A DNA stretch of 64,000 nucleotides from Dimorphilus gyrociliatus (lineage: Eukaryota; Animalia; Annelida). This document shows positions 33,001 to 49,100 of this stretch, piece by piece. The notes under the pieces are model-generated. The model did not search any database and was not told the origin of the DNA. It saw only the letters and a list, made by a program, of their open reading frames with translations. The stretch spans positions 62,001-126,000 of the forward strand of contig CAJFCJ010000026.1 in the NCBI GenBank assembly GCA_904063045.1. The letters run 5' to 3'. Each line of letters starts with the position of its first letter. Position 1 is the stretch's first letter. Made by a program: the position numbers and the translations under genes.

Positions 33001-36000
33001 AATGGAAAAATATCTGACTCTGATGCATATTGCAAAAAAATTTCAAGATTTTACGACACTAATGATTAAAACAGTTGATAGTATGTTATTTAATTCAATT
33101 AAATTCTTGCTAAGTAAATAATTTTTTATTGTATTTTTTAAAAAAAAAAATAGTTTCTAGATCTCGAATTGTGTCAGCTCCGCCAAATGTGAATACTAGA
33201 AAGAAGGCGTTTGAAATATCATTTAATCATACAGGACCTGGAATATTTAATCTAATTACATCAAAATATCATAAGTAATTTCTTTTTTCTTGTTTTATAA
33301 TTAAATAAATAATTCTTTTTCCCTTTTTTAATTTACCTCAGATGTACGATAAATTTGTATTCCCTTCAAGTAAAATACGGTGGAACATCGCAAATTATTG
33401 AAATGATCTGTTATAATTTTGTCATACATTTCGACGATAAACGTATTACCTCTATTCCGGTTTGTATCGAGTTTACATTCTCATTTAGAAATTCTTAATC
33501 ATTATACTATTTATTAATTCAACGCAGAATTTTTCTGTTACGTATCAAAAGACTTGTGATATATCTTCTCAACAAAAACGCGTACAAGCAAAATCATTGT
33601 TAAAAACAGAAAAATTAAATTCAACTTTATCCATTGTTATACCAGCTATAGATATAACATTCCCGTATAATTTCAATTTTGCAAGTTGTTATCAAGATGT
33701 AAGATAATCTATTAAATATTTTAATCTTATTAATTATTAATATTTTTTTTCATATTTGAAAGCTGCTTAATTTGAGAAAAGCCCTAAAGAAAATACGATT
33801 TACTGAGCCGCCAATAGTTCAGGATGAATACATACCTTTTGATTTGGATATTAAGATTAAAGTATAATTTTTTTTTAGATATAAATATACTAAATTGAAA
33901 TTGTTTATTTTTCAAAAGGATTTCACACTGTCTCTTGAGGATGAACAAGATCGAGAAGTTAGAATGGATTATAATTATACGGTATTACGGTATATATTCT
34001 AGGGGCTTTTTTATAATAAAATATTAATTTTTTTCCAGCTAATGAGAGATGAATTTATTGAAGGATTAAAACGGCTTCATCTACTACAGGAAAAAATAAG
34101 TGAGGCAGAAGGACGAGTGACAGGTGAAAATAGAGATCTTTCCCTGATTCATCTTTAAGGTATAAAAATAATTTGATTTGTTGCAGGTGAAAGAGTTGAT
34201 GAACTTTTTAAGCAGCTACACGAAAAGAATATTCGATTATTTATTGACCGAGCCCGGCAAATTCATAAAAAATGTCGAATAGAGCAACTAATACGACCAC
34301 TTTTCAAGTGGCAAATGACAAATATATCCATGGCTTTCATGTGTAGTGAAGCTATTGCAAGTCGAATATATCTAAAGAAAGAGGTGGGCAAACTAGAGGA
34401 ACTAAGGTTGGTAGTCAATCGAGATTCCGGTTGCTAATAATATTAACCTTTGTCCTTTTAAAATTCTAGTGGTAGTAAATTACCCAAGAATCAGGATTTT
34501 GATACATTGATTGGACGCGTAGTCGATTTTAGTGTGTCAAAATGGGTATTTAATTTTAGAGACATAACAATGAATTGGTTATCATTGGAAGACTTTAGAG
34601 TGAGAGGTCTAGCTATCCTTAGTGAAGATGCCGCATCAGAACAATGTATACTGTATATTATTTTATATGGAAGAATAGCTATAATTATAATCTTTTATTT
34701 TACAGCTCAAAGGGAGCTTATCCTGCCTTTAGAAAAACCTTGGAAGGATATTCATATTAAACGTAGTTTAATACCAATAAAATTTAATTATAATTTTGAA
34801 TCAAGTACGTGATAATCTTTTTCAAACAAATTTATATTTTAATACTCTTGCAGAAGTGAAATTATTTACAATGGCTTATGGACCCAATTGGGAACCTATC
34901 ATGCAATTCTTTCAGCAAAGCATGAATCTGATCAATGCTCCATCTGTCGATCCAAGCCCACCCTTGCCGTTTTGGGATAAAATCCGTTTATACTTTCATG
35001 GTGCTTTTTCATTAAAAGCTGCTGAAATGAAATGGCTCTATCACGCCAGCTTTGACCCTTTAAATGATACAGAAATTTTAGACTGGACATGGTCTGATGT
35101 AGAATGGATATTAAAAGGTTTTATTTGCTTAAATTAGAATTATTTATTCAGTAATAAAGGCTTAAAATATTAAGACACGTCTAAATTTAATGGAACCTTG
35201 GACATTTATGCCAGAACTGCATCTAAATATGAAGAATGTAGACTTTTTCGTTTTCCTCGATTAGAATTGACGTAATTTATATCCTTTCAAATTGAATGAT
35301 AATTAATTAACTTTGCTTGTATAATTTAGACTTAAACTAAACTGGATATGTTTGTCGGGGAACCCAAATGATCATCATTCTGTTAAAAGAGTTGCACCTG
35401 AGAAAATTTCTGATTTGAAGGTATAAATTAATTAATTGTATTGTTTATAGTTACAACGCTTGCGTTAAACAATTATTTTTAGACTTATGACGCTTTTAAA
35501 TACTTTCGATCGTCGAACGTTGACGTTGAATTGAACGCTGAAGTCAAGTCATCGGAAAGTACACAATCTCGACTATGGTCTAATACTTTAAGATGGTTTG
35601 AAAAATTTTTGGTAAACAAAAAATGAAATATTTTAATAAGATTAAAGAAGAAAAAATTATTCACGTATATGTTAATTTGTAGGTTTGTCTTAAAAAAGTT
35701 GCTGTACCTATACGTCGCGGTAATTTATTCGGAGGTCGACCCAAGAGAAAATTACAGTTAACCCGACATATACGGTTGTTATCATTTTGTTAAATAAATC
35801 GGTCTTGTGTGAAATTTTTTTATTAAACCATAGAAACATAAAAGTGAAAGTTGCACTGGAAAAATACCACCTTGTTCATTTTTCATCATCAGCAAAGAAT
35901 TGTGGATTTGAAGCATCTACTAAAAGTGTCAGTATTGATTGTGAGGCAACTTTGAAACTTGTGCCGTATAAAGAAAATCTAATTCGACGACCAGCTGCAG

Positions 36001-39000
36001 TATGGAGTGTAAATAAAATGTCTATTCAAGCTTCCGGCTTGGAAGTTCGTTTATGTGGACGAGCCAAGAATCACTTGTACAAACGAACATATTTACTTAT
36101 AGATCGGTATATTGAGCAAATTCAATAATTAGCGAAGATATTATAGGCTTTATAACTTTTCAGTCTATGTTATGAAAGGGGAATAAATTACGTTGAAACT
36201 GAAGACGCGGAAGATCCTAATAATTATAATCAAAGGCTAACAGTAACAAATGACGAAAAACCTAGAAAACCAAAGCACTACGTTCAAGTTTCTGGTGTAA
36301 AAATGGTGTGGTCTGTCGATAATCGGCAGATTTTCATGTCGTGAGTGGCGATTAAACTCTAGTTAATATTTAACTAATCCATATTTCTACTAGTCTTATA
36401 GATGGTTATATGCGTGCCCAAAGTATAAAAAAGAATCTATCGAGTGATGCTCTAAAATTGAGTAAGAGAGAATATAAAAGATATCATGTAAGTTTTTTCC
36501 CAATATATCAATATAGTAAATACATAAGAAAATATATTAGACGCGTCTAATATATAAATTTGTATGGAGAGCAAAAAATACAACCCCAACTTTTTAGAAT
36601 ACAACTTTACTTCGCAAATCTCCATCTGAATTAAAAGAAGGAAAAATCTCTTTTGAGGAATCTTATGGAAGTACCATGTTAAAAAAATTAGTTTGCGAGA
36701 GAGAGAAACATTTTGTTGCTGTCCACGAAGAGATGAGCGAAAGAAAGACGGTTGTTAAGGACGAATTAAAGGGCTTAAAAGCTTCAACAATGGATGATGT
36801 TAGTGAAGTATCTTGGCACATAGACGTTGAGAATTTTCAGGTTCTTCTTAAGGGATTAGAGACTTGCGGCTATGTGATAACAACGGCAAAGGAAGTCGAA
36901 ATAGTTTCATCTCAACACCAACCAGTCTGGATTAAAAATAAGCTTCATTCAAAAACGTCATTAAGAGCTACAATGGAATGCGTGCAATACTTTGCTACTG
37001 TGGAAAAGAATAGAAACATTAAAGCCAATGAAGCTTGCCACGTTGTTTGGTTAGAATCATCCCACATAACTGCACCTTTTTCGAATATAGTGCCCACGTA
37101 CGAAAAACTATTAGTTTATTCTCCCGGTACAAGAGCTGGTTGCGTTATTCAGGTTGGTCTTAAAATAAATAACCTTTTTAATCTAATTTTACCTAAATTA
37201 TTTTTATTACTACAGAGTGATACAAACCAGACTTTCAACTTGCAAAGAATAATAGAAAGATGCAAGTGTGATTGTTATTACATAACATACGAACCAATGG
37301 AAGATGTTTCCGATGCAAAACCACCAGTTGTCAGTTTTTCCGTTTTCAATTAACTTTCTAATTAAATATTCTAAATTGTATTAAATATAGGAAACGTACG
37401 ACGCGTTTAAAGAGGACAAAGAAGAAGGCGTAGATACGCTTACTATTCTACATCATGATTTAGACATTTCAGCCAGCTCTGTAAGTTCAGAAAAAAACCA
37501 ATTTAAATATCAAATTTAGAACAAGTTTTTTTTCTCTTGCAGCAACAATACGAAATTGTTATGGATATTTTAAATAACTTGTTGCTGTATATGGAACCAA
37601 GACAGAAGACTTTATTACAAAAACAAAAGAATTTACGTTTCGCTATGGAATTATCTACTGAGGATCCCAAGGAGGAGGTACTTAAAAAACAGGAACTCAT
37701 CAGAAGACTCCTAATGTCCTTGCGTGGTATGGAACGGAAATTCTATTTAATGCTTAAAGACGCTGAGAGAGGGAATGATCATCGCGCAAATGACGCTCTT
37801 ATAGGAATGGAATTAAACATAGAAGATACTAAAGAAAAATTGTATGAAGAAAACGAAGCTCTAAAGACAATTATTAGGTCTCCATTTAAATAGTATAACC
37901 TATAAATATTAATCTATTCATTTTGACAGCTATTACAAAGAAATCAAAATGAAGGAGATAAAAGAAAGAGAACGCAAAGCAATGGAAGAGAAAACGCGAT
38001 GTGATACGAATCATCAGCAAGGTAAATTTTCATCCAAAGAAATTGCTTCGTATTAAATATTTATCAAATATATTACTTTTATCTTTATTTTTAACTCAGC
38101 ATATGAAGTAAGTATAGCTAGGCGTTACGAAGTTTGTTTTACTCATGCCTTATGGAGGATGGCGGAGGAGGATGGGCAAATTGGTATTGCAGACTTAACT
38201 CTACATGAGTTTCTGTAAGATATAGAAATATATTCAGATCGGTTATATATTTCGAATGTAAAACTTTGATATTATTAACAGTTATACGCGTATACATAGA
38301 GAAGATGATACGGGTGAACATAAACTTGAATTAGGCTATGTGCATATAAAAGCTCCTCAGCCAGACGCCGTTTATCAGGATGTTCTAAAGGCTACTCGTC
38401 TCAGGGAAAACCAACGGGAGCCCCTTCTAAGAATCTTTTGTCAATATCAGGGAGCCGTAGGCGGTATACCCGTTAAAGAACATTTTGAAGTTAATATTGT
38501 ACCATTGACAATAAGCATATCGAATAAATTTGCAACAAAAGTTCAACAATACTTTTTCCCTAAGAGGAAAAGAATAACCATTCCATCAGACCTTGTACTC
38601 TTTGGTTAGTTATTTAATCTCAATTTAAATATATTATACAATCGTTAAATATTTTATATCTAATATAATAGACCTTTTGGAAACGGAACAACTACCACAG
38701 AGTATATGTGTTGACGAAAGGTTAGCTCATTTTGAATCTGCAGAAGATGTTAGTCAGGAGAGACCACCCGCGCCTGTCTCAGGGAAAAAGAAGAGTAAAT
38801 CAAGTAAGAAGGGGAAAGATGACGTCAAAGTGATGATGGTCTGTTGCTTTAAGTTTTCTTATATAACATTTATTTTTAATTAAGTTACTAGTAATTTATG
38901 AATTCTTTTAAAATATTTAGGAAAGAGCTGAAAAGACGAATATGTTTGCTTATATTAAAATTGGAGAACTACCACTTGTTCTTAGTTATAAAGGATCAAA

Positions 39001-39467
39001 AGAAAAAAATTTGTCCGATGTAAGCGATGTTCAGCTGCTTATGCCTTCTTTAGAATATCGCAACAAAACTTGGCTGTGGTTAGAATTGTTAAATGCAATG
39101 AAAACCGAATATAAAAAATATTTAATATCTCAAGTAAGGATTTGTTCATTTGTATTGAAAAGAAAATCCAATCTTTAAGAGAATATTTTCATAGGTTCTT
39201 CGTCAAAAGTTACGTTTAAGACCACGATTCGTTGAGCCACCCAAGACGGGTGAACAGCAGGAAGATAAAGCGCAATTATTATTGGGGAAAAGATTTTTTG
39301 TAAGTAAAATAAAACCAGCTAACTGTGCCTTTTAAAAATAACTTTATATTTTAAACTAATCTTTTTTAACTCGTTATTATCAGCTAACCGCTTCTGAAAG
39401 GAAACGATTGCTTAGAAATTCAATAGAGGGACAATCTTCTAGTTCCTCCTCCCCGTCGAATTGTTGA
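30031..39467 (+). CDS. BLTP2: Bridge-like lipid transfer protein 2 (KIAA0100/hobbit/Fmp27), many small exons
   Basis: N-terminal anchor exon MNLVHLAICTAVFWWFLFR; YGPNWEP...DPSPPLPFWDKIRLYFHG; GNPNDHHSV; Apt1-like C-terminus YIKIGELPLVLSYKGSKEKN..LEYRNKTWLW and EDKAQLLLG; TGA at 39465-39467. The span fits a protein of roughly 2000+ aa. Not every internal exon was checked. Confidence 0.9.
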
Positions 39468-40403: not shown

Positions 40404-41131
40404 AGATAATTTTCTGTTCATAATCGTCGTTAACCTGCTAACTCTGGAGGTCGAATGACTAGTGGCCGACAAGAAAGCGCGACCTCTATAACAAACTTCA
40501 TATAGCGTATATGAAATAAAAGGAAAAAATTTGTTAAGACTCTATAAAAACAGGACTGTGTATAAAAATGGTTGAGCATTAAATATATATATAATAAGAA
40601 CGTCATAAACAGGGAAGATATACTTCTTACAAAAAAAAGATCTGCTTAAAGGGGATGTACTGTCAATTATGTGATACTAGTTTCTCTCTCTTCCTATTTA
40701 ATCTTTAGGAAATAGCTAAAGTTTGTTCACGACTTGTAATTGACATTGCTATTTATATATGCACGTCATCATAATTGATTATCCCATATTGAAATTTCTC
40801 TAACGCCTAATATTCAATGAACACTAATGAACTTATTAATTGAATGAGTCAGAGTACCAATTATCATTCTCTTGTTGAAACAGATATTGTCACAGGTGCA
40901 TCGGCTTAAAATCTACCAAGTTACTCCTTGGGGAAAATCTCTTAGCTTGTCAATATCAAACGGAATTTTCTTTTTTTAAAGCAATTTGTTATTTATTTAT
41001 CTATTTTATTCGATCATATACTGTATATATATATATATATACAGACAGCATTACAAATATAAGTCAGATGTCGCCAAGGCGATTTTGTTTGATAAATATT
41101 TTGGGAACCACTGTTGTTGACAGGCTAATTA

Positions 41132-42914
41132 TTATATCGTCTCTCCTCTTTTATCATTGGCCATGGTCGTTCCTCCTCTCTCCTTTTTCATCCACTCCCT
41201 AATTCGAGCTCGTAGAACATTATCCGGCTTGAATCCGTACTCTTCTGTACTTTCGCCGGCTTTCTTTAAACAATTTACGAGATATTTCTTATCGTATGTA
41301 AGACCGTCAGCTCCAACTACTGGCTTCTTCATCAAACGGCCACTTATAGGGCAAATAAATTCTTTGGGTATACCCACTTCCATATTGAAATTACGTTTAA
41401 ATTCATGATCCGATAGAGAGCGAGTAATTTGTTTGGATTCTTTTGCGGTAAAGGAAACTTGTCTATCGTTTCTTGACAAATCATTACACTCGGATTCGGG
41501 GGAAACAAATGCACTATCATTAATGTTAGCTGGAGGTGCTGCAATTGCATAAATTCTGGGTTTTGAATTTGGTGGGGGTAACGCTCTGGCAACTCTATCT
41601 CTCACCATTCGGTCTAATTCTATGGCCATCTCTGGGAATAAACATCAATCATATAATAATTTGTGTTCCTTTTAAGAATTATCTACCGTAATAGATAGCC
41701 TGTCGAAAATCGCCGTCCAAGCGCTCTGGTTCCGCCACATAATTTTCCTCTTTAATGATAATGTCTTTATCGATGGCTAAGTTCAAGGGTTTCTAACAAA
41801 TAAACACTTCAATCTTACACCTTCGAAAGAGATAAATTATCCCAAACCTCCGTCAAAATAGGTGGAACTACCGTTTGACCTAATTTCTTATTCCTGGTAA
41901 ACCTCGACAAAGACGTTGGAAACGTGCTATAAATCCTAAAATAAAAATTTTACGAAAATTAAAAGAGAGAGGTAGTTTAATCCACTAGATGGCATTTTGT
42001 TATTCATACCGTCTTCCTTTTGTTTGTCTTCGTTTACAGATTACCAAACATGTTATTATTAATATTAAAGCTATTAGACAAACTAAGAAGATGACAACAT
42101 CAACTATAGGTGATGTTTCAGTTTTTACTTCATCCTTAACGACAGTTACCGAATTAGCTAGCAATTTGCTTTCTTTCATTGCATCTGCTGTAAATTTATT
42201 GTAATTATCATTATTTTTTGTCAATAAAGAGTACAAAGTATACTTATTCTTGTTATTCGATATACTAAATATGTTTTATATAAATATATATATCTATAAA
42301 AGGCTTTAACGCACGTTGAACTGATAATAAATGTTCCTTCGTAGATCGATCACTAAATTCAATAGTGCGGCATCTATCCGAAATATTTTTGATGCTCCAT
42401 CTGTGATCTTCACACGTTTCTAAACATCTCTCATCGCCTACATGAAAATAAACGAGATGAAGATTATAATAACGATGAGATTAACCCAAAAAATTATATC
42501 CTAAAGGTAAATGAATAAAAAAAAAGTACAAAAATTATTAACCACTGCACACTCCTGAAAATTGGACGGCAAGAGTATTGAACGGTAATAAAGGGGTTGA
42601 GTGTATGATCTTATCAATATTCAGACAACGGGAGAGCACCAAAATGTCTTCACTTTTCCATTCTGGAGAACATACGAACAGCCATTGATTAATAAAGATC
42701 TGAAGGCGTCCACTAGATGTTCTTAGCGTTGCCGATTCACCTGAGTTATACATCGACTTTTCTGTAAAAATTTTTAAATTCTCTTTTTCTTATTATTCAA
42801 TAAGAATTTTAATAAAAAAAATCAACTTAAGCTTAATAATAAACCTTTTTGCGAATGTACAAATGTTATTAATAAATAATGAGTGTGTAGTAAGAATATA
42901 TCAAGCGCCCTCAT
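41132..42914 (-). CDS. Type I membrane protein of about 445 aa: signal peptide, SRCR-like ectodomain, TM, cytoplasmic U-box (7 exons)
   Basis: Exons 42914-42845, 42761-42543, 42437-42311, 42264-42010, 41935-41872, ~41792-41687 and ~41631-41132 join in frame. Ectodomain GRLQIFINQWLFVCSPEWKSED..CSGDERCLETC; TM IVDVVIFLVCLIALILIITCLVIC followed by KRR; U-box-like IPKEFICPISGRLMKKPVVGADGLTYDK..KPDNVLRARIREW. Confidence 0.8.
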
Positions 42915-43327
42915 CTGAAATGAAAAAAAAAATAGATGTTACAGCCTAATCACACCTACCGGGTATACAAACCATTAGTTATCGACTAATAATATCAATT
43001 AAAGCGATAAATAAATGAGAATTTGCTAATTTTATTTCGAAGGAATGACTGAAAGAATTTTTTTTTCACGATACCACTACTAGAAGGCGCAGTTTCGCAC
43101 CTGGAAAAAAATGAAAAAAACGTCGTTCGTAGTCGTACATAGGCCTAGCACGCACGTCGAGCGTTTTTCATTGATTATCATCTTTCTCTTTTAAGAGGAA
43201 ATTTTCGATTTTTCAGAAGAAACTACAGTTCTTTTCTTTTTGTGAAACACAGTTTTTGTTTTATTGTTATTATTTTTTATCTTTTATTATTTTTGAATTT
43301 TTTGAATTTCAATAATTCTTGGAAAAA

Positions 43328-44078
43328 TTATCCAGCTTTTTTTAACATATGTTTAAATTGCCGGAGAAATTTGTCCATAGTATAATTCTCTTTCATTCCG
43401 ATATCCAATCCAAGTGCTTCGGCTATTTCTTTAACATACTGATCGTTCTTTGGAATTTTTGGAGATGAACTTCCTCCATTCCTTGGACGATCCAACGTAC
43501 TTCCTACGAAATCGTAGTTATCAAAACCGAGTATACCTATATAGAATAATTAGGAATAAAAAAGCAAGTTGATAAAAAAGATAAGGAAAAAAGTTTTTTA
43601 AAATTTAGTCATTATACGGATCCACTCAGTTACGGCGGCTGCTCTTTAGACTGACAACCGTCTTAACTTGATACAATGTATCGCTATCTACGCTAACACT
43701 TTTAGAAGACACATTTGAAATATCTAAATAGAGATATTTTTATATTAAGTCATATTTGTTTAATAAAAAAGTATAAAATGTAACTTATTAAAAAGTTTAA
43801 TAGCTTTACTATTTGTAATAAAATATAAATACCTTGTTTATGATTTTTCATATATTTTTATATCTATTTTAAATAGAGACGCTTAAAAGAAAAATAATTC
43901 TCTACAACTCACTTGGTCTTTTCATTTTCCTATTATAATTTCTGTTTAAAAAATGAAGAGCGATTTTATCATTAGGAACAACAACTGTAAGATCCAAGTT
44001 CGAAAATTCCGGCCTCGGTGCTCCCATTAATACATTCGAAATGTACGCCAGGAACATAAAATAAGCAAATTTGTACAT
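43328..44078 (-). CDS. Small secreted protein of about 160 aa, possible prohormone (3 exons; middle exon boundaries uncertain)
   Basis: Signal peptide MYKFAYFMFLAYISNVLMG; strong donor A|GTGAGT near 43910; terminal exon ILGFDNYDFVGSTLDRPR...KHMLKKAG-TAA ending at 43328; phase-compatible middle exon at about 43633-43723. Confidence 0.55.
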
Positions 44079-44552
44079 TCCCTTAAATTCAGCCAGCGCG
44101 AAGCTTGCGCTAGACTCTTTTACATCGTACTTTTTATATTTAGGCGCCTTAACTTGATGCAAATGATACTCGAGGCGCAAACGACAAGCGCTCTCTGGCG
44201 TTAAATTCTACCTTTTTCTTCACACTTCGATCTCTCGAAAAAACGATTAACATTGTCAACAAAATAACTAATAGCAAAAATATTCTTTACATAAAATTTC
44301 ATATTCTCAGGCTAAAATCGATTACAACACAGGTCGATGGAAAATTTTTATTTGTCTTTTTATGGACGATGTCAAAGAAATAGATAAAGAGAAAAAGAAG
44401 CCAAAAGAGCTAGTAGGAGAAAATTGTTTACGTTGTAGAAAATTAATACATATGGACATACTAAAATCAGTCTAACAATAATAAAAACTATATAATGTAG
44501 TTGAGTTCCTAAGGGAGACTAGAATGAAAGAATGTCTAATTAAGTGTGTATA

Positions 44553-45626
44553 TTACAAATGCAAAATACAAGTACGAATATTTGCAAGAGTTTTCTGCCA
44601 AGCTTCTGTTTCAAACGCTTGACATAGGATAGTCAAGAACTTTTCTTGGGCTTCGTAACGCTCTTTCAAGCCAAATTTAACAACATACTGTACTTTTCGC
44701 AGACAGACTGGACATAGTAACTGAGGTTGAGAGCAGGCTTCTTCTATAGAGCTGCTCTCATTCATCAGGCATGCGTAGTATTTGCAGTGTAACAAACCAA
44801 AAGTATGACAAGTTTCATGTAAGACTACTTTTATAATCTTCCACATTAATTCAGCATCTATTTTGGTTATATCGCTCCAACTATCAAGCCTTGGTTCAAA
44901 TCGACCAAAACAAAAGACAGCTGATCTAGTTGCTAAACTTCCCTGACCCAGTAGAAAATTTAAGTTCTCTGAAGGATATAAATCGATCCAAGAAGCACCT
45001 ATTATGGTTGCACCATCCGAAGGTAATAAGCTGCCCAAGTGAGATAGGACAGGACCAACTAATATTTGTTCCTTTTCAGTTTTCTGATGAACTCTTGTTT
45101 TATAATCACCATATGGTCGTTGAGGGAGTATTTGAACGTCGAATCCGTAAAAAAATACCGATAAATATTTCTGAAGAACTTGAAAAAATCCTTTAATATT
45201 TTCAAATGAAAAATTATGAATAAAGTCCGGAAATTCTCCAAGAGGTTGTAAATAGATTACTCGTCGTCGTTTATAATTTACTCTATGTAACTGAATTGGG
45301 GATCTCCACATTCCAAATGTCTGTAATTGCCAGTTTTTCAAATCGGTGATTGGAAGCGGATGAAAGACAGTCGTTAACGAGTGCAATGAATTTAATGCGT
45401 CGTTAGTTATTCGAAAAGTTCTATCGCTATCCTCCTCTTTAAATGAGTCTGTGGTCAAGGTAAAGTTTAAAATATGAAATTAAAGTAGTCTAAAAATTTC
45501 ACCGAAATCTGTATGAAATTTCAAAACAAAGTAAAATCTTCTCTCATTTTCATCTAATTTATTCAAATTTCCTAGAACATGCTTAAGGCTTTTTCGATTA
45601 GGTATACACCAACTTATACATAGCAT
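44553..45626 (-). CDS. AMZ2: Archaemetzincin zinc metalloprotease (2 exons)
   Basis: HETCHTFGLLHC (HExxHxxGxxH) followed by CLMNESSSIEEA..LCPVCLRK; IYLQPLG and DLYP..NFLLGQ. First exon MLCISWCIPNRK.. splices in frame. AMZ1 versus AMZ2 orthology not tested. Confidence 0.9.
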
Positions 45627-46128
45627 TATTCATTGAAAAATCAAGATAAATTGACATAAAAATAACAGAAAACAATCGTTTCGAACGATATCTACGTAAA
45701 ACACACACCAACTACCGGTTATACTCAACTGAAGTCAAAAAATATTCTATTTACCTTTTTATCGCTCTATTGAGCTTTAAATGTGAGCATTGAGCATGAT
45801 TAAGACTTTGAATGTTATCCAGTAAAAGGAGAAGAGACAGAATGATTTTTTTCGTTTTCTTAATCTTTGTGCCAATTATTGAAGAGGTTATACACTCATT
45901 AATTAGAACCAATTATTCGCGCCAGTTATCGATATTGATTAATATTTACTTGTGTGGATATTTGTAAGCTGCATTACGCGAGGAGAACACAATAGTATTA
46001 GGATTAGGGCACTGCATATAATAACACAATACACTCAAATCAATATTTCGGCGTCGGCAAGAAGCTCCTACCTTCAACTCGTCCCCATATTTAATTAAAT
46101 GTATCGAGATGAACTTTACTGAATCAAT

Positions 46129-49100
46129 ATGGCACATATAAAAACTTACTGCAGAATTAAACCTTCATCAACTGCCTATCAAGATTTAAAAGTTATAGAT
46201 AATAACATAGTTATTCGGCTGTCGGATATTAGCCCAGATTTGACAAAAGTCAGATCGAAATCCGCAGTAAATTATCAGTTCTTATTCGGTCACGTCTTCT
46301 TTCCAACATCAAGCCAGACGGAGATATTTGAAACAGTAGCTTCTAATATCATTCAAGGTTATTATTGAAAATTTTTCCTAAAACATCATTCTTCTAATTA
46401 AAAGAATAATGACTTCTTTTCAAAATCTCAGGCTTTCTCGAGGGATACAATGGAACTATATTCGCTTATGGACAAACAGGATCAGGTAAAACCTATACAG
46501 TTGAAGGAGGGGGCAGGAAATTCGCAGAAAGAGGTCTTGCACCCAGAGCCCTGTCGAATATCTATAAAGCCTTAGAACCAAGACAAAATAGAGAAGATAT
46601 TTCTATTCACGTATCATATATGGAAATTTATCAAGAAGTCGGCTATGATTTGCTTATTCCAACGGACAAAAATTCTATAGTAACGTCTTTTCCAAAAGTC
46701 ACCGTTGTTGAGGGACCAAACGGAACTTGCATCATTCGCAATCTTTCGTGTCATTTAGCGGCAACTGAAGACATTGCTCAAAGCCTACTTTTACAAGTAT
46801 TTTCTTTTTAGTCATTAATCTCGATTCATCGCGTTTTATCATTGTAAAGGGTCAAGCTAATAGGAAAATTGCCGAAACTCCTATGAACTTAAGGTCTTCA
46901 AGGTCACACGCAGTTTTTACTATACAACTGACGTCGAAGAAACACGATTCTGATGTGATAGTCAAGTTTGTTTTAGTTTTTTTCGTTCTCTTTCTTATCA
47001 TAATTAAACGTCTATTTCTCTCGGTGGCAGATCGAAGCTCCATCTCGTCGATCTAGCTGGCTCTGAAAGAGTAGCAAAAACCGGTATTGAGGGACAACAA
47101 TTGAATGAGGCGAAGTTTATTAATTTATCACTTCATCACTTGGAACAAGTCATTAGTTCATTACAACAAGAGGCACAGTCCGACACGAAGAGGTCTCGTG
47201 CTACTGAGTATCGACTTTACAACCGGTATAGTTGCTTTTAGAATGAAAAGGACAACTAGTTTTATTTAAATAATTCGTTTTTCCTTTTTGTTTTTCCTTT
47301 TCTTTATTTCTTTTTTTGTCTTAATTTCGCTTTTGAAAAGGAATGAAATAGTTTCCTTCCATACGTTAAGGCGATTGCTCAGAAACGACGCGTAAAATTT
47401 AACCCATCTAATAAGTAAACGCTCCACTAGACATGATGCAAAATGCTTTGTTTCGCTAGATGCTAAAAAAGAGGCTATGATCTGTTAAAAGGTCGTTTGT
47501 TTTTTTTTTTTACGCAGATGGGTGACTTCTTTGAGGCCATCTAGTGCTGACAGCGTCCGAACAAACGTTTCTACTCATCACATTCCATATCGTAATTCAT
47601 TACTAACTATGGTACTAAGAGACAGTTTAGGTGCAGAAAATAGTTTCTTTAATCTTCTTCCATGGATCGATCTAAAAATAAACTTTGAATCGTATTTACT
47701 CCAGGCGGAAACTGTCAAACAGCCATGATAGCGACAATTAGCCAGGAGGAAGAGAATATGAACGAAACAATATCAACGTGCCGTTTCGCTCAAAGGGTTG
47801 CGTGTATCACTAATATTTTGCGGTAAGCAACAAAAACGATAATATAAATTTATTAACTTTATAAGTATGCATTTAATTTTTTTCTTTAAAAAAAAATATT
47901 TTTACTTAAAAAAAAAGAAAAAATGAAGAAATAGACGATAAATCCATGATAAATCGATTGAGAAAAGAGAATTCGGGACTACGCGCAGAGATAAATATAC
48001 TACGATCTAAGCAGGTATGCTGTGTGTATGTATATAAAAAATATACCTTTTAAATGACGCGTGAGCGGATTGTTTTCGCATGAATTAACCAGGCAGAGAC
48101 ACATAGTCTTGCTTCAATTGGATTAGTGTTGTAATGAACGAGCTGTTTTAATCGCTTTTATTAGGAACATTTCTGCCAACTTTTTCGTTCGTGTTTGAAA
48201 TCACCGGTTAACTACTTACGTTGAGAGATAACATCTTATTTATCTCTTAATTATATCTGTTAATCGGATTTTTTATTAGGCCATGGACGGTAAAGATCTA
48301 ACCGGAGATTTAAGTGAGGAAGATAAAAAATCCGTAGCAAAAATTATTCAGGCCTACATTGCTGGTAGGATAAAAGATCCTGTTCTTGCTGGTTAGTTAC
48401 ATTTCACTTAGGAAAGACGACATAATTAATGTTATACTCTCATTTCAGGTATATCGTCTGCCCAACAATTTAGAGAAAGTCTACGAATTTTAAAGGCTAT
48501 GATTATGCGCCATTACGCCTCAACCGCACCTTCCGCCGTGTCACCCGTATCTGACAGTAGAAATGTACAAGCTCCCGTTACACTTGTACAATCAACTCGG
48601 TAATTCAAACCTAAAGGAGCTCGAGGAAAATGGTTAATTAATTGCGTTTATTTTCCCGTCTTATTAGCGTAACATCTCCATCTTACACTGTTAAACGGGT
48701 CACTCCAAACGAAAATATTTCTAAGGAAAAAGGTGTTCTCAGGAACGCAGCTGTGCAAAAAATTATTCAAAATGCATTACATAATATAAAGAAGAATCAG
48801 CAGAAGGAAAATGAAGGTAATATATTAGGATATTTTTTTATCGGTTTATAGAATAAGCCACTATTTTCACTTCTTTGTACAATTTTTTTTCTCCACTCCC
48901 CTCGTTCCCGTTTTTTTTATTTAGAAAAGAAAGCATTATATAAATCGCCTTTCGAGCAGCAAAGAGAAAAAGAAATTTTAAAGTTATCCGATAAGGTCGA
49001 AAGTAAAATTGTTAAAGTTCAAAGCCAAGAAAAAGAATTAAAAGAGCAGGCCCTTAATCATAAAAAGAATGATTTAATACGAATCAATAATGATTTAAAG

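What the first reader, a model, noticed from the sequence alone, without database searches (positions are those of the whole stretch)
41132..42914. Candidate receptor-type ubiquitin ligase: SRCR-like ectodomain + single TM + cytoplasmic U-box
Seen: hand splicing links four separate ORF-track fragments into one in-frame type I membrane protein with a signal peptide, a 6-Cys ectodomain resembling SRCR (GRLQIF..W..VCS..W...D..VLSRCL...CSGDERCLETC..W), a TM helix with KRR stop-transfer, and a C-terminal U-box. Known: the animal U-box proteins I know (CHIP, UBE4A/B, PRPF19, PPIL2, WDSUB1, UBOX5) are soluble, while receptor-like E3s such as RNF43/ZNRF3 use PA-TM-RING. Inference: this may be an undescribed ligand-sensing membrane E3 that ubiquitinates surface proteins, possibly in innate recognition or receptor turnover.
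Basis: partly seen in the sequence, partly recalled or inferred. Interest (0 to 1): 0.82.

Follow-up and report, generated by a model that had tools for sequence, protein, structure and literature searches.

The report
Membrane-anchored U-box protein with SRCR-like ectodomain
This is a real, expressed animal gene for a small single-pass membrane protein with a degenerate scavenger-receptor (SRCR) domain outside the cell and a U-box ubiquitin-ligase domain inside. It is a stripped-down version of an uncharacterised receptor-like ligase also present in the annelid Capitella and listed for corals.

Summary
One 1449-nt spliced transcript contig (run X2) joins a 5'UTR exon and seven coding exons on the minus strand (ATG 42914, stop 41134-41132). 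All introns are GT..AG. The protein is 427 aa.

- **Signal-peptide-like start:** weak.
- **Ectodomain:** about 100 aa. Its first half gives SRCR as its only Pfam hit, below threshold, and almost only SRCR chains in the PDB. Its second half matches at motif level only.
- **Membrane segment:** one strong TM helix followed by a basic stop-transfer cluster.
- **U-box:** Pfam 41.8 bits (cut-off 21.4), a confident model, and all top fold matches are U-boxes.

**Conservation.** A syntenic ortholog in a related species keeps all seven exons (dN/dS about 0.15).

**"Undescribed" needs qualifying.**
- Capitella teleta ELU12834.1 (1193 aa) is SP-SRCR-stalk-CUB-TM-U-box. It shares two exact intron positions with this gene: CS|G inside the SRCR domain, and a phase-2 Arg codon after the TM.
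- A 2016 supplement lists Acropora "SRCR-CUB-TM-UBOX" proteins.
- No functional study was found.

**Caveat.** The U-box here lacks about 6 residues of loop 2, including the near-invariant Pro, so ligase competence is unproven.

The only earlier scan note on this stretch is this same finding.

The parts
42973..43002 (-). 5'UTR exon (upstream end not defined). Its last three bases are an ATG in frame with, and spliced directly onto, the main ATG.
   Evidence: Transcript contigs of X2 and X1, joint 42973/42914; sequence read.
42845..42914 (-). Coding exon 1: start codon and signal-peptide-like segment (23 aa plus the first base of a split codon).
   Evidence: 87% aa identity in ortholog L002. KD maximum 1.3-1.45 only.
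42543..42761 (-). Coding exon 2: N-terminal half of the SRCR-like domain (GRLQIF..W..VCS..W...D..VLSRC ... GVCS).
   Evidence: Pfam SRCR is the only hit (18.9 bits, E 0.0019, profile 6-48/100). 13 of 15 PDB hits are SRCR proteins. Ortholog exon 2 also hits only SRCR. dN/dS 0.17.
42315..42437 (-). Coding exon 3: C-terminal half of the SRCR-like domain (G-DERCLETC-x4-W ... DRC). The last canonical Cys is absent. One N-glycosylation sequon (NIS).
   Evidence: Motif and spacing read. No statistical hit. 75% aa identity in the ortholog, dN/dS 0.26. A phase-1 intron in the Gly codon after C-S is shared with the Capitella SRCR.
42010..42187 (-). Coding exon 4: short acidic stalk, TM helix and basic stop-transfer cluster.
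   Evidence: 81% aa identity in the ortholog.
42036..42098 (-). Transmembrane helix (21 residues, VVIFLV...LVIC).
   Evidence: KD 3.53 over 21 residues, the only segment above 1.5 in the protein. Acidic residues lie before it and KRRQTKGRR after it, so the C-terminus is cytosolic by the positive-inside rule.
41848..41935 (-). Coding exon 5: juxtamembrane cytosolic segment with a YxxPhi-type motif (YSTF).
   Evidence: Joint 41848/41792 in the transcript. 90% aa identity in the ortholog, dN/dS 0.07.
41687..41792 (-). Coding exon 6: cytosolic linker.
41132..41631 (-). Coding exon 7: short helix, disordered linker, U-box, stop codon at 41134-41132.
41177..41371 (-). U-box domain (residues 87-151 of the exon 7 ORF), with a shortened loop 2.
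   Evidence: Pfam PF04564 41.8 bits against a cut-off of 21.4. The same place is found by a family search of the genome. AF2 pLDDT 92-97. Foldseek top hits are all U-boxes, with CHIP at rmsd 1.6-2.0 A. The deletion is seen in alignment A1.
41053..41131 (-). 3'UTR (at least).
   Evidence: The X2 contig reaches 41053.

Best explanation
A single gene encodes a 427-aa type I (N-out, C-in) single-pass membrane protein. It has a weak signal peptide, one degenerate group-A-like SRCR domain split over two exons, a short stalk, a TM helix with a basic stop-transfer cluster, about 200 cytosolic residues that are mostly disordered, and a C-terminal U-box. It is the compacted counterpart of the annelid Capitella gene SP-SRCR-S/T-rich stalk-CUB-TM-U-box; here the stalk and the CUB domain are gone. 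Shown: the gene model, one transcript, domain identities, purifying selection, and shared intron positions. Inferred: the U-box, held at the cytosolic face of a membrane, recruits an E2~ubiquitin (UBE2D- or UBE2N-type). It then ubiquitinates its own lysine-rich tail or neighbouring membrane proteins, and the SRCR domain supplies extracellular or luminal partner binding. A conserved juxtamembrane YSTF motif suggests endocytic cycling. This would make it a U-box analogue of PA-TM-RING ligases.
For: One spliced transcript contig covers all exons, and a second study shows two of the joints. The U-box is supported by Pfam at 41.8 bits, a high-confidence AF2 model, and Foldseek hits that are exclusively U-boxes. 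For SRCR, the only Pfam hit of exon 2 in both species is SRCR, and 13 of 15 PDB hits are SRCR proteins. The CSG..E..L..C....W motif continues across the exon 2/3 junction. The ortholog locus L002 is colinear over about 12 kb with all seven exons conserved at 63-90% aa identity. dN/dS is 0.15 overall and 0.07-0.26 per exon. Capitella P0116 has SP, SRCR (35-40 bits), CUB, TM and U-box in the same order. This gene is P0116's best match in the window's genome. The two genes share a phase-1 intron in the Gly codon after C-S of the SRCR domain and a phase-2 intron in an Arg codon just after the stop-transfer cluster. Three further introns have the same phase at similar places.
Against: Loop 2 of the U-box is about 6 residues short and lacks the Pro present in 22 of 24 aligned U-boxes. 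By established knowledge of CHIP, that Pro contacts the E2. The E2-docking prediction gave no answer. The second half of the SRCR domain has no statistical support, and the whole domain was not folded. One canonical SRCR Cys is Tyr in the ortholog, and the last canonical Cys is absent in both. The signal peptide is weak. The U-box tree does not resolve a clade with Capitella, and P0116 ranks only 116th among hits to exon 7. No ligand, substrate or localisation data exist.
Confidence: 0.6

Rival explanations
1. Pseudo-ligase or adaptor. The architecture is as described, but the trimmed U-box no longer binds an E2. Instead it serves as a dimerisation or docking module on a membrane receptor tail.
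For: A deletion in loop 2 removes the SPxT segment with the near-invariant Pro. It is present in both this gene and its ortholog, so it is a fixed lineage feature. Capitella keeps the full loop. The docking test gave no support, which is not evidence either way.
Against: The U-box is under purifying selection (pN 0.13 against a saturated pS). It keeps the loop-1 Ile, the PV..DG.TY core and a canonical fold at pLDDT above 90.
Confidence: 0.25
2. Membrane-tethered housekeeping ligase with a vestigial ectodomain. The reduced SRCR stub no longer senses anything. The protein is simply an E3 anchored to an endomembrane (ER, Golgi or endosome) for turnover of membrane proteins.
For: The CUB domain and stalk have been lost relative to Capitella. 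Canonical SRCR cysteines are eroding: Cys to Tyr in the ortholog, and the last Cys absent. A YxxPhi-type motif lies next to the membrane.
Against: The ectodomain exons are as constrained as the rest of the gene (dN/dS 0.17 and 0.26). The single N-glycosylation sequon and five Cys positions are conserved.
Confidence: 0.12
3. The ectodomain is not SRCR-derived. It would be a lineage-specific Cys-containing module that resembles SRCR by chance.
For: The score is below the Pfam gathering threshold (18.9 against 26.1). The second half has no hit. The half-domain model is uninformative.
Against: SRCR is the only family hit in two orthologs. PDB hits are almost exclusively SRCR. The domain aligns colinearly with the Pfam-significant SRCR of Capitella. 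The intron sits in the same Gly codon of the C-S-G motif.
Confidence: 0.1
4. Two adjacent genes, or a chimeric assembly, wrongly joined.
For: None beyond the general possibility of chimeric transcript contigs.
Against: One contig carries seven canonical joints, all in frame. The same exon order and reading frame are conserved in a second species. Capitella has the same domain order in one annotated gene, whose CDS I re-derived exactly from the genome.
Confidence: 0.02

Closest known systems
Capitella teleta hypothetical protein CAPTEDRAFT_186518 (ELU12834.1, UniProt R7V2R0; P0116), uncharacterised
   Same: Signal peptide, N-terminal SRCR, single TM with a basic cluster, and a U-box at the extreme C-terminus. 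The phase-1 intron in the Gly codon of the SRCR C-S-G motif and the phase-2 intron in an Arg codon after the TM are both shared. The U-box tail motif L(K)xDxxLRxRIxxW is also shared.
   Different: It is 1193 aa, with a roughly 480-residue S/T-rich stalk, a CUB domain and a cytosolic region of about 340 residues. Its loop 2 is complete, with SPMT. All six canonical SRCR cysteines are present.
[quoted passage not shown] 2016 (PMC5119243)
   Same: An SRCR-containing ectodomain, a TM and a U-box in one predicted protein.
   Different: Much larger multi-domain ectodomains. They were only catalogued, never studied.
PA-TM-RING ligases (RNF43/ZNRF3, GRAIL/RNF128, Goliath family)
   Same: By established knowledge, these are type I membrane proteins with a small ectodomain and a cytosolic E2-recruiting domain that ubiquitinate membrane proteins. 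This is the working analogy.
   Different: No PA domain was found here (no Pfam hit). The catalytic module is a zinc-free U-box rather than a RING. This gene is not a member.
Soluble U-box ligases CHIP/STUB1 and UBE4B
   Same: The same fold: rmsd 1.6-2.1 A over about 70 columns to CHIP and E4B U-boxes.
   Different: They are soluble with TPR or Ufd2 core partner domains, and loop 2 is intact with the E2-contacting Pro.
Group A SRCR domains (MARCO, Mac-2 binding protein, SR-AI)
   Same: Six cysteines and a domain encoded by two exons, which are group A traits by established knowledge. PDB matches include MARCO and Mac-2BP.
   Different: Those proteins have no enzymatic tail. Here the last canonical Cys is missing, an extra Cys sits in the ERCLETC segment, and the central loop is shorter.

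Membership tests
U-box (PF04564) | Profile score above the curated cut-off | tested here: met
   41.8 bits against 21.4, profile 1-72/73. The ortholog scores 45.1 bits. The genome-wide family search returns the same place.
U-box (PF04564) | RING-like cross-brace fold without zinc ligands | tested here: met
   AF2 pLDDT 92-97 over the domain. The top 30 Foldseek hits are U-boxes. The domain holds only two Cys and no His/Cys ligand set.
U-box (PF04564) | E2-contacting residues: loop-1 Ile and loop-2 Pro (CHIP I235/P269, by established knowledge) | tested here: not met
   The loop-1 Ile is present (CPIS). The loop-2 Pro and about 6 residues are deleted in this gene and its ortholog, whereas the Pro is present in 22 of 24 aligned U-boxes.
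U-box (PF04564) | E2-dependent ubiquitin ligase activity | not testable with these tools
   The complex-prediction run with a UBE2D-like E2 of the same genome gave no verdict.
SRCR (PF00530) | Profile score above the curated cut-off | tested here: inconclusive
   Only exon pieces could be scored. Exon 2 gives 18.9 bits against 26.1, covering profile 6-48/100. Exon 3 gives no hit. The joined domain was not scored.
SRCR (PF00530) | Conserved cysteine framework and the C.G.E..L..C....W signature | tested here: inconclusive
   Five of six group-A positions are present, the last is absent, and there is one extra Cys. The signature is present with a one-residue insertion. The second Cys is Tyr in the ortholog.
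SRCR (PF00530) | SRCR fold (beta-sheet cradling one helix) | tested here: inconclusive
   The exon-2-only model has pLDDT 49.9. Its strand-strand-helix-strand-strand order is compatible, but there is no significant Foldseek match. The whole-domain fold was left out (joined step).
Type I single-pass membrane protein | One TM helix with positive-inside charge asymmetry placing the C-terminus in the cytosol | tested here: met
   KD 3.53 over 21 residues. The flank before it is acidic and KRRQTKGRR follows it.
Type I single-pass membrane protein | Cleavable N-terminal signal peptide | tested here: inconclusive
   The hydrophobic stretch reaches only KD 1.3-1.45 and contains His/Thr/Tyr. A VHS|Q site fits the -3/-1 rule. 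No signal-peptide predictor was available.
SRCR-(CUB)-TM-U-box family (Capitella R7V2R0 type) | Same order of domains | tested here: met
   SP, SRCR, TM and U-box are colinear.
SRCR-(CUB)-TM-U-box family (Capitella R7V2R0 type) | CUB domain between SRCR and TM | tested here: not met
   No CUB hit in any exon. Only about 30 residues separate the SRCR-like domain from the TM.
SRCR-(CUB)-TM-U-box family (Capitella R7V2R0 type) | Shared intron positions and phases | tested here: met
   CS|G in phase 1 and the post-TM Arg in phase 2 match exactly. The introns after the SP, before the TM exon and after the next small exon have the same phase at similar places.
SRCR-(CUB)-TM-U-box family (Capitella R7V2R0 type) | Reciprocal best match or a supported clade | tested here: inconclusive
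   P0116's best hit in the window's genome is this gene (E 1.7e-8). But P0116 ranks 116th for exon 7, and the U-box tree is an unresolved star.
PA-TM-RING ligases (RNF43/ZNRF3/GRAIL) | PA ectodomain and zinc-binding RING | tested here: not met
   No PA or RING family hit; the domain is a U-box.

The most novel reading that the evidence does not exclude
SRCR/CUB-TM-U-box proteins form an old cnidarian-bilaterian class of scavenger-receptor-type ubiquitin ligases. They would couple extracellular pattern or partner binding directly to cytosolic ubiquitination. The class is absent from vertebrate and ecdysozoan models and is therefore unstudied. This 427-aa gene would be its minimal natural form, with one SRCR, one TM and one U-box, and so a convenient entry point for biochemistry.
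Probability: 0.3. Interest if true: 0.75.

Novelty: new variant of a known kind. Interest (0 to 1): 0.5.

Why it matters
Receptor-like membrane E3 ligases known from model animals use RING domains (RNF43/ZNRF3, GRAIL, MARCH). The U-box ligases of model animals are soluble. A conserved, expressed gene that puts a U-box behind a scavenger-receptor domain shows that this combination exists in at least annelids, and it is listed for corals. It would be a direct wire from an extracellular recognition domain to ubiquitination. The compact version here has no stalk and no CUB, carries a single sequon and is only 427 aa, which makes it tractable to express. It also illustrates how a miniaturised genome trims a multi-domain receptor while keeping its two end domains. 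The loop-2 deletion raises a concrete question: can a U-box work without the canonical E2-contacting Pro?

Tried and rejected
- **Complex prediction.** I ran U-box residues 78-165 against an intronless UBE2D-like E2 of the same genome (L007:1474-1923:-). The verdict was "no answer" (score 0.00), which is neither support nor evidence against.
- **Exon 2 folded alone.** The model had pLDDT 49.9, and Foldseek gave nothing significant. As a half-domain it is uninformative.
- **Exon 3 against Pfam and the PDB, window and ortholog.** No hits. A weak FANCL_d2 match (19.7 bits, below cut-off) is taken as chance.
- **BLASTP of exon pieces against the Capitella SRCR.** Only a 13/30 match in the first half, not significant on its own.
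- **The search for homologous proteins with the Capitella C-terminus.** It returned only itself. This search is word-based, so a blank says little.
- **The protein-atlas search.** On P0116 there was no usable hit. On exon 7 it returned only generic U-box clusters.
- **U-box tree with own-genome paralogs.** An unresolved star; it cannot show orthology.
- **My first hand model.** It used the exon 5 donor at 41820 (a 28-nt intron, in frame). The transcripts show the donor at 41847 instead.
- **Kazal-repeat proteins high in the hit list (P0002, P0007, P0143).** These are look-alikes of the PVVGADG.TY segment, not relatives.
- **Bacterial promoter/terminator scan.** Irrelevant for this eukaryotic gene.
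- **Organism name.** No tool gives one. The genome has 77.9 Mb in 349 contigs. This matches the published Dimorphilus gyrociliatus assembly (about 78 Mb, about 350 scaffolds, median intron 66 bp; PMC7854359), but that is inference only.
Full report
**1. What is in the sequence**

The window is AT-rich (32% G+C) and eukaryotic. The finding lies on the minus strand. Reading that strand gives seven coding exons that join in frame, every intron starting GT and ending AG.

| Exon | Window coordinates |
|---|---|
| E1 | 42914-42845 |
| E2 | 42761-42543 |
| E3 | 42437-42315 |
| E4 | 42187-42010 |
| E5 | 41935-41848 |
| E6 | 41792-41687 |
| E7 | 41631-41132 |

The coding introns are 83, 105, 127, 74, 55 and 55 nt, with 14-31% G+C. 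The CDS is 1284 nt, or 427 codons plus the stop.

**2. Transcript evidence**

- Only two public runs hold the stretch.
- Run X2 (2017, "organism A") contains one 1449-nt contig. It lies on 43002-41053 with seven joints, all CT..AC on the plus strand, which is GT..AG on the gene's strand.
- Six of those joints are exactly the coding introns above. The seventh is a 58-nt intron in the 5'UTR (42972-42915).
- Run X1 is an RNA library of a coral metatranscriptome from a different study. It holds a 147-nt contig spliced at the 5'UTR intron and intron 1, plus unspliced pieces.
It is one mRNA.
- The transcript uses the exon 5 donor at 41847. A donor at 41820 that I first picked by hand also reads in frame but is not the one used.

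**3. Domains, tested exon by exon**

The joined protein was never handed to a tool.

*U-box (exon 7)*
- It carries a U-box at 41.8 bits against a curated cut-off of 21.4. The same place is recovered by a family search of the whole genome.
- An AlphaFold2 model built on 24 aligned U-box segments gives pLDDT 92-97 over residues about 85-152.
- Foldseek against the PDB returns only U-boxes at the top: OsCIE1, LubX, GmPUB13, CHIP and E4B. CHIP aligns at rmsd 1.6-2.0 A over about 70 columns.

*SRCR-like ectodomain (exons 2 and 3)*
- Exon 2 has SRCR as its only Pfam hit (18.9 bits, E 0.0019, profile positions 6-48 of 100). This is below the 26.1-bit cut-off, but it covers only half a domain.
- Against PDB sequences, 13 of its 15 hits are SRCR proteins: CD163, PIT54, CD5L, CD6, MARCO, Mac-2BP and neurotrypsin. 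All align to residues 15-47.
- Exon 3 gives no statistical hit.
- By eye the SRCR signature C-x-G-x-E-x-x-L-x-x-C-x4-W runs across the exon 2/3 junction as CSG-G-DERCLETC-EDHR-W, with one inserted residue.
- Of the six group-A cysteine positions, five are present, the last is missing, and there is one extra Cys.

*Membrane segment and signal peptide*
- Exon 4 holds the only strongly hydrophobic segment (Kyte-Doolittle 3.53 over 21 residues). Acidic residues precede it and KRRQTKGRR follows it.
- By the positive-inside rule this puts everything after it, including the U-box, in the cytosol, where E2 enzymes are.
- Exon 1 is only moderately hydrophobic (1.3-1.45), so a cleaved signal peptide is plausible but not shown.

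**4. Conservation**

- An exhaustive HMMER search of 1.84 billion representatives with exon 7 found one close relative, P0001 (72% identity, 166 aa). It then found 283 weaker hits, mostly ordinary U-box proteins, with some Kazal-repeat look-alikes among them.
- P0001 is the last-exon ORF of a related species. Its 36-kb contig (L002) is colinear with the window from 47462 to 35583.
- L002 carries all seven coding exons in order, at 63-90% amino-acid identity.
- Nei-Gojobori counts give dN/dS 0.15 overall and 0.07-0.26 per exon. The two ectodomain exons score 0.17 and 0.26.
- The ortholog's exon 2 again hits only SRCR.
- The Cys of "SRCL" is Tyr in the ortholog. Because its canonical partner, the last SRCR Cys, is absent in both species, that disulfide seems to have been given up in this lineage (inference).

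**5. The same architecture elsewhere**

*Capitella teleta*
- Among the 150 listed hits, one has a signal peptide, a TM helix and a C-terminal U-box. This is P0116, Capitella teleta ELU12834.1 / R7V2R0, 1193 aa.
- Pfam finds SRCR (residues 38-115, 35-40 bits, above cut-off), CUB (611-716) and U-box (1101-1169), with the TM at 741-759.
- The window's gene is P0116's best match in the window's genome (E 1.7e-8).
- The alignment extends upstream of the U-box, and both share the unusual tail L(K)xDxxLRxRIxxW.

*Shared gene structure*
- I re-derived the Capitella gene structure exactly from its genomic locus (L022). The spliced CDS reproduces P0116.
- Two introns coincide with the window's gene. One is a phase-1 intron inside the Gly codon after C-S of the SRCR motif (AHCS|G against GVCS|G). 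The other is a phase-2 intron inside an Arg codon just after the stop-transfer cluster (NRR|R against KGR|R).
- Three more introns have the same phase at similar places: after the signal peptide, before the TM exon, and after the next small exon (26 against 29 residues).
- In Capitella the exon after the CS|G intron continues into a roughly 480-residue S/T-rich stalk, followed by the CUB exons. In the window's gene it is 41 codons long and is followed directly by the TM exon.
- The window's gene therefore reads as a compacted version of the Capitella type.

*Corals*
- The supplement of Neubauer et al. [quoted passage not shown] It also lists an A. millepora contig ending in CUBX2-UBOX.
- So the combination has been catalogued in corals, although I could not compare those sequences.

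*Literature*
- Full-text searches found no functional study of any transmembrane U-box protein of this kind.

**6. A caveat on catalysis**

- In the 24-sequence alignment the Pro of the loop-2 SPxT motif is present in 22 sequences. The two exceptions are this gene and its ortholog, which lack about six residues there. Capitella keeps SPMT.
- By established knowledge of CHIP, that Pro (P269) contacts the E2, and mutating it kills activity.
- The loop-1 Ile and the domain core are intact, and the domain is under purifying selection.
- The domain clearly does something, but E2 recruitment is an inference.
- A docking prediction with an intronless UBE2D-like E2 from the same genome gave no verdict, so it counts neither way.

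**7. How it most likely works**

*Shown*
- A single-pass membrane protein with an SRCR-derived domain on the extracytosolic side and a U-box on the cytosolic side.
- It is expressed, conserved, and related by gene structure to a larger annelid gene.

*Inferred*
- The U-box recruits E2~ubiquitin at the membrane and modifies the protein's own Lys-rich tail or neighbouring membrane proteins.
- The SRCR domain provides partner binding.
- The conserved YSTF next to the membrane may drive endocytosis.

The working analogy is the PA-TM-RING ligases. This gene is not a member of that family, because it has neither a PA domain nor a RING.

*Rivals*
- A pseudo-ligase or adaptor, because of the loop-2 deletion.
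- A housekeeping endomembrane E3 with a vestigial ectodomain.
- A non-SRCR ectodomain.
- A two-gene artefact, which is essentially excluded.

**8. Source organism (inference only)**

The genome has 77.9 Mb in 349 contigs. This matches the published assembly of the miniature annelid Dimorphilus gyrociliatus: about 78 Mb, about 350 scaffolds and a median intron of 66 bp (PMC7854359). It also fits the Capitella affinity and the domain trimming. No tool named the organism.

**9. Verdict**

- This is a new, minimal variant of a receptor-like membrane E3. It belongs to an SRCR-(CUB)-TM-U-box architecture that sits in databases and in one supplementary table but has never been studied.
- Interest is moderate (0.5). 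It would be higher if ligase activity and a cnidarian-to-spiralian family were demonstrated.

- Any search or fold of the joined 427-aa protein.

Noticed in passing
window 42973-42975 (minus strand): The 5'UTR exon ends in ATG, and splicing puts it directly in front of, and in frame with, the main ATG at 42914. An in-frame TAA lies two codons upstream. The protein may therefore start MM... and be 428 aa.
   Followed up: partly
window 42185-42190 (minus strand): There is a tandem NAGNAG acceptor (cagcag) at the start of exon 4. The transcript contig uses the first AG; using the second would drop one codon and stay in frame.
   Followed up: no
window 43325-43537 and 43905-44286: Two blocks between this gene and the next recognisable one are conserved at 72-84% amino-acid identity with L002 (4067-4279 and 3208-3592). 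L002 has ORFs of 75 and 110 aa called there with no Pfam family. This looks like a small unknown gene or genes.
   Followed up: no
window 35583-39144, 44505-45476, 45856-47462: The neighbours are conserved in synteny with L002: a Hobbit-family gene, a Peptidase_M54 (archaemetzincin) gene and a kinesin, named from the Pfam labels on L002's called genes.
   Followed up: partly
exon 7 ORF residues about 100-131 (window 41237-41332): The U-box segment PVVGADGLTYDKKYLVNC mimics the Kazal motif. It pulls multi-Kazal inhibitor proteins (P0002, P0007, P0143 and others) high into the HMMER hit list as false relatives.
   Followed up: yes
L007:1474-1923 (G000:C7:829446-829856, minus strand): An intronless 150-aa UBE2D-like E2 (UQ_con 177.8 bits). 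L009 carries a single-exon UBE2L3-like E2. Either could be a retrogene or simply an intron-poor gene.
   Followed up: no
proteins P0020, P0025, P0037, P0046-P0048, P0059, P0071, P0083, P0102, P0123: Unnamed eukaryote-like proteins from metagenomes and assemblies combine one or two U-boxes with a single hydrophobic helix at the extreme C-terminus. These look like tail-anchored U-box proteins, another membrane-bound U-box layout. P0035 and P0060 have N-terminal TM helices and tandem U-boxes.
   Followed up: partly
window 42734-42844 (run X1): A 2024 coral metatranscriptome contains this organism's transcripts. They include an unspliced piece of intron 1 with two substitutions (42771, 42792) and a 1-nt insertion (42783). 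A slightly different strain of the animal seems to live in that coral sample.
   Followed up: no
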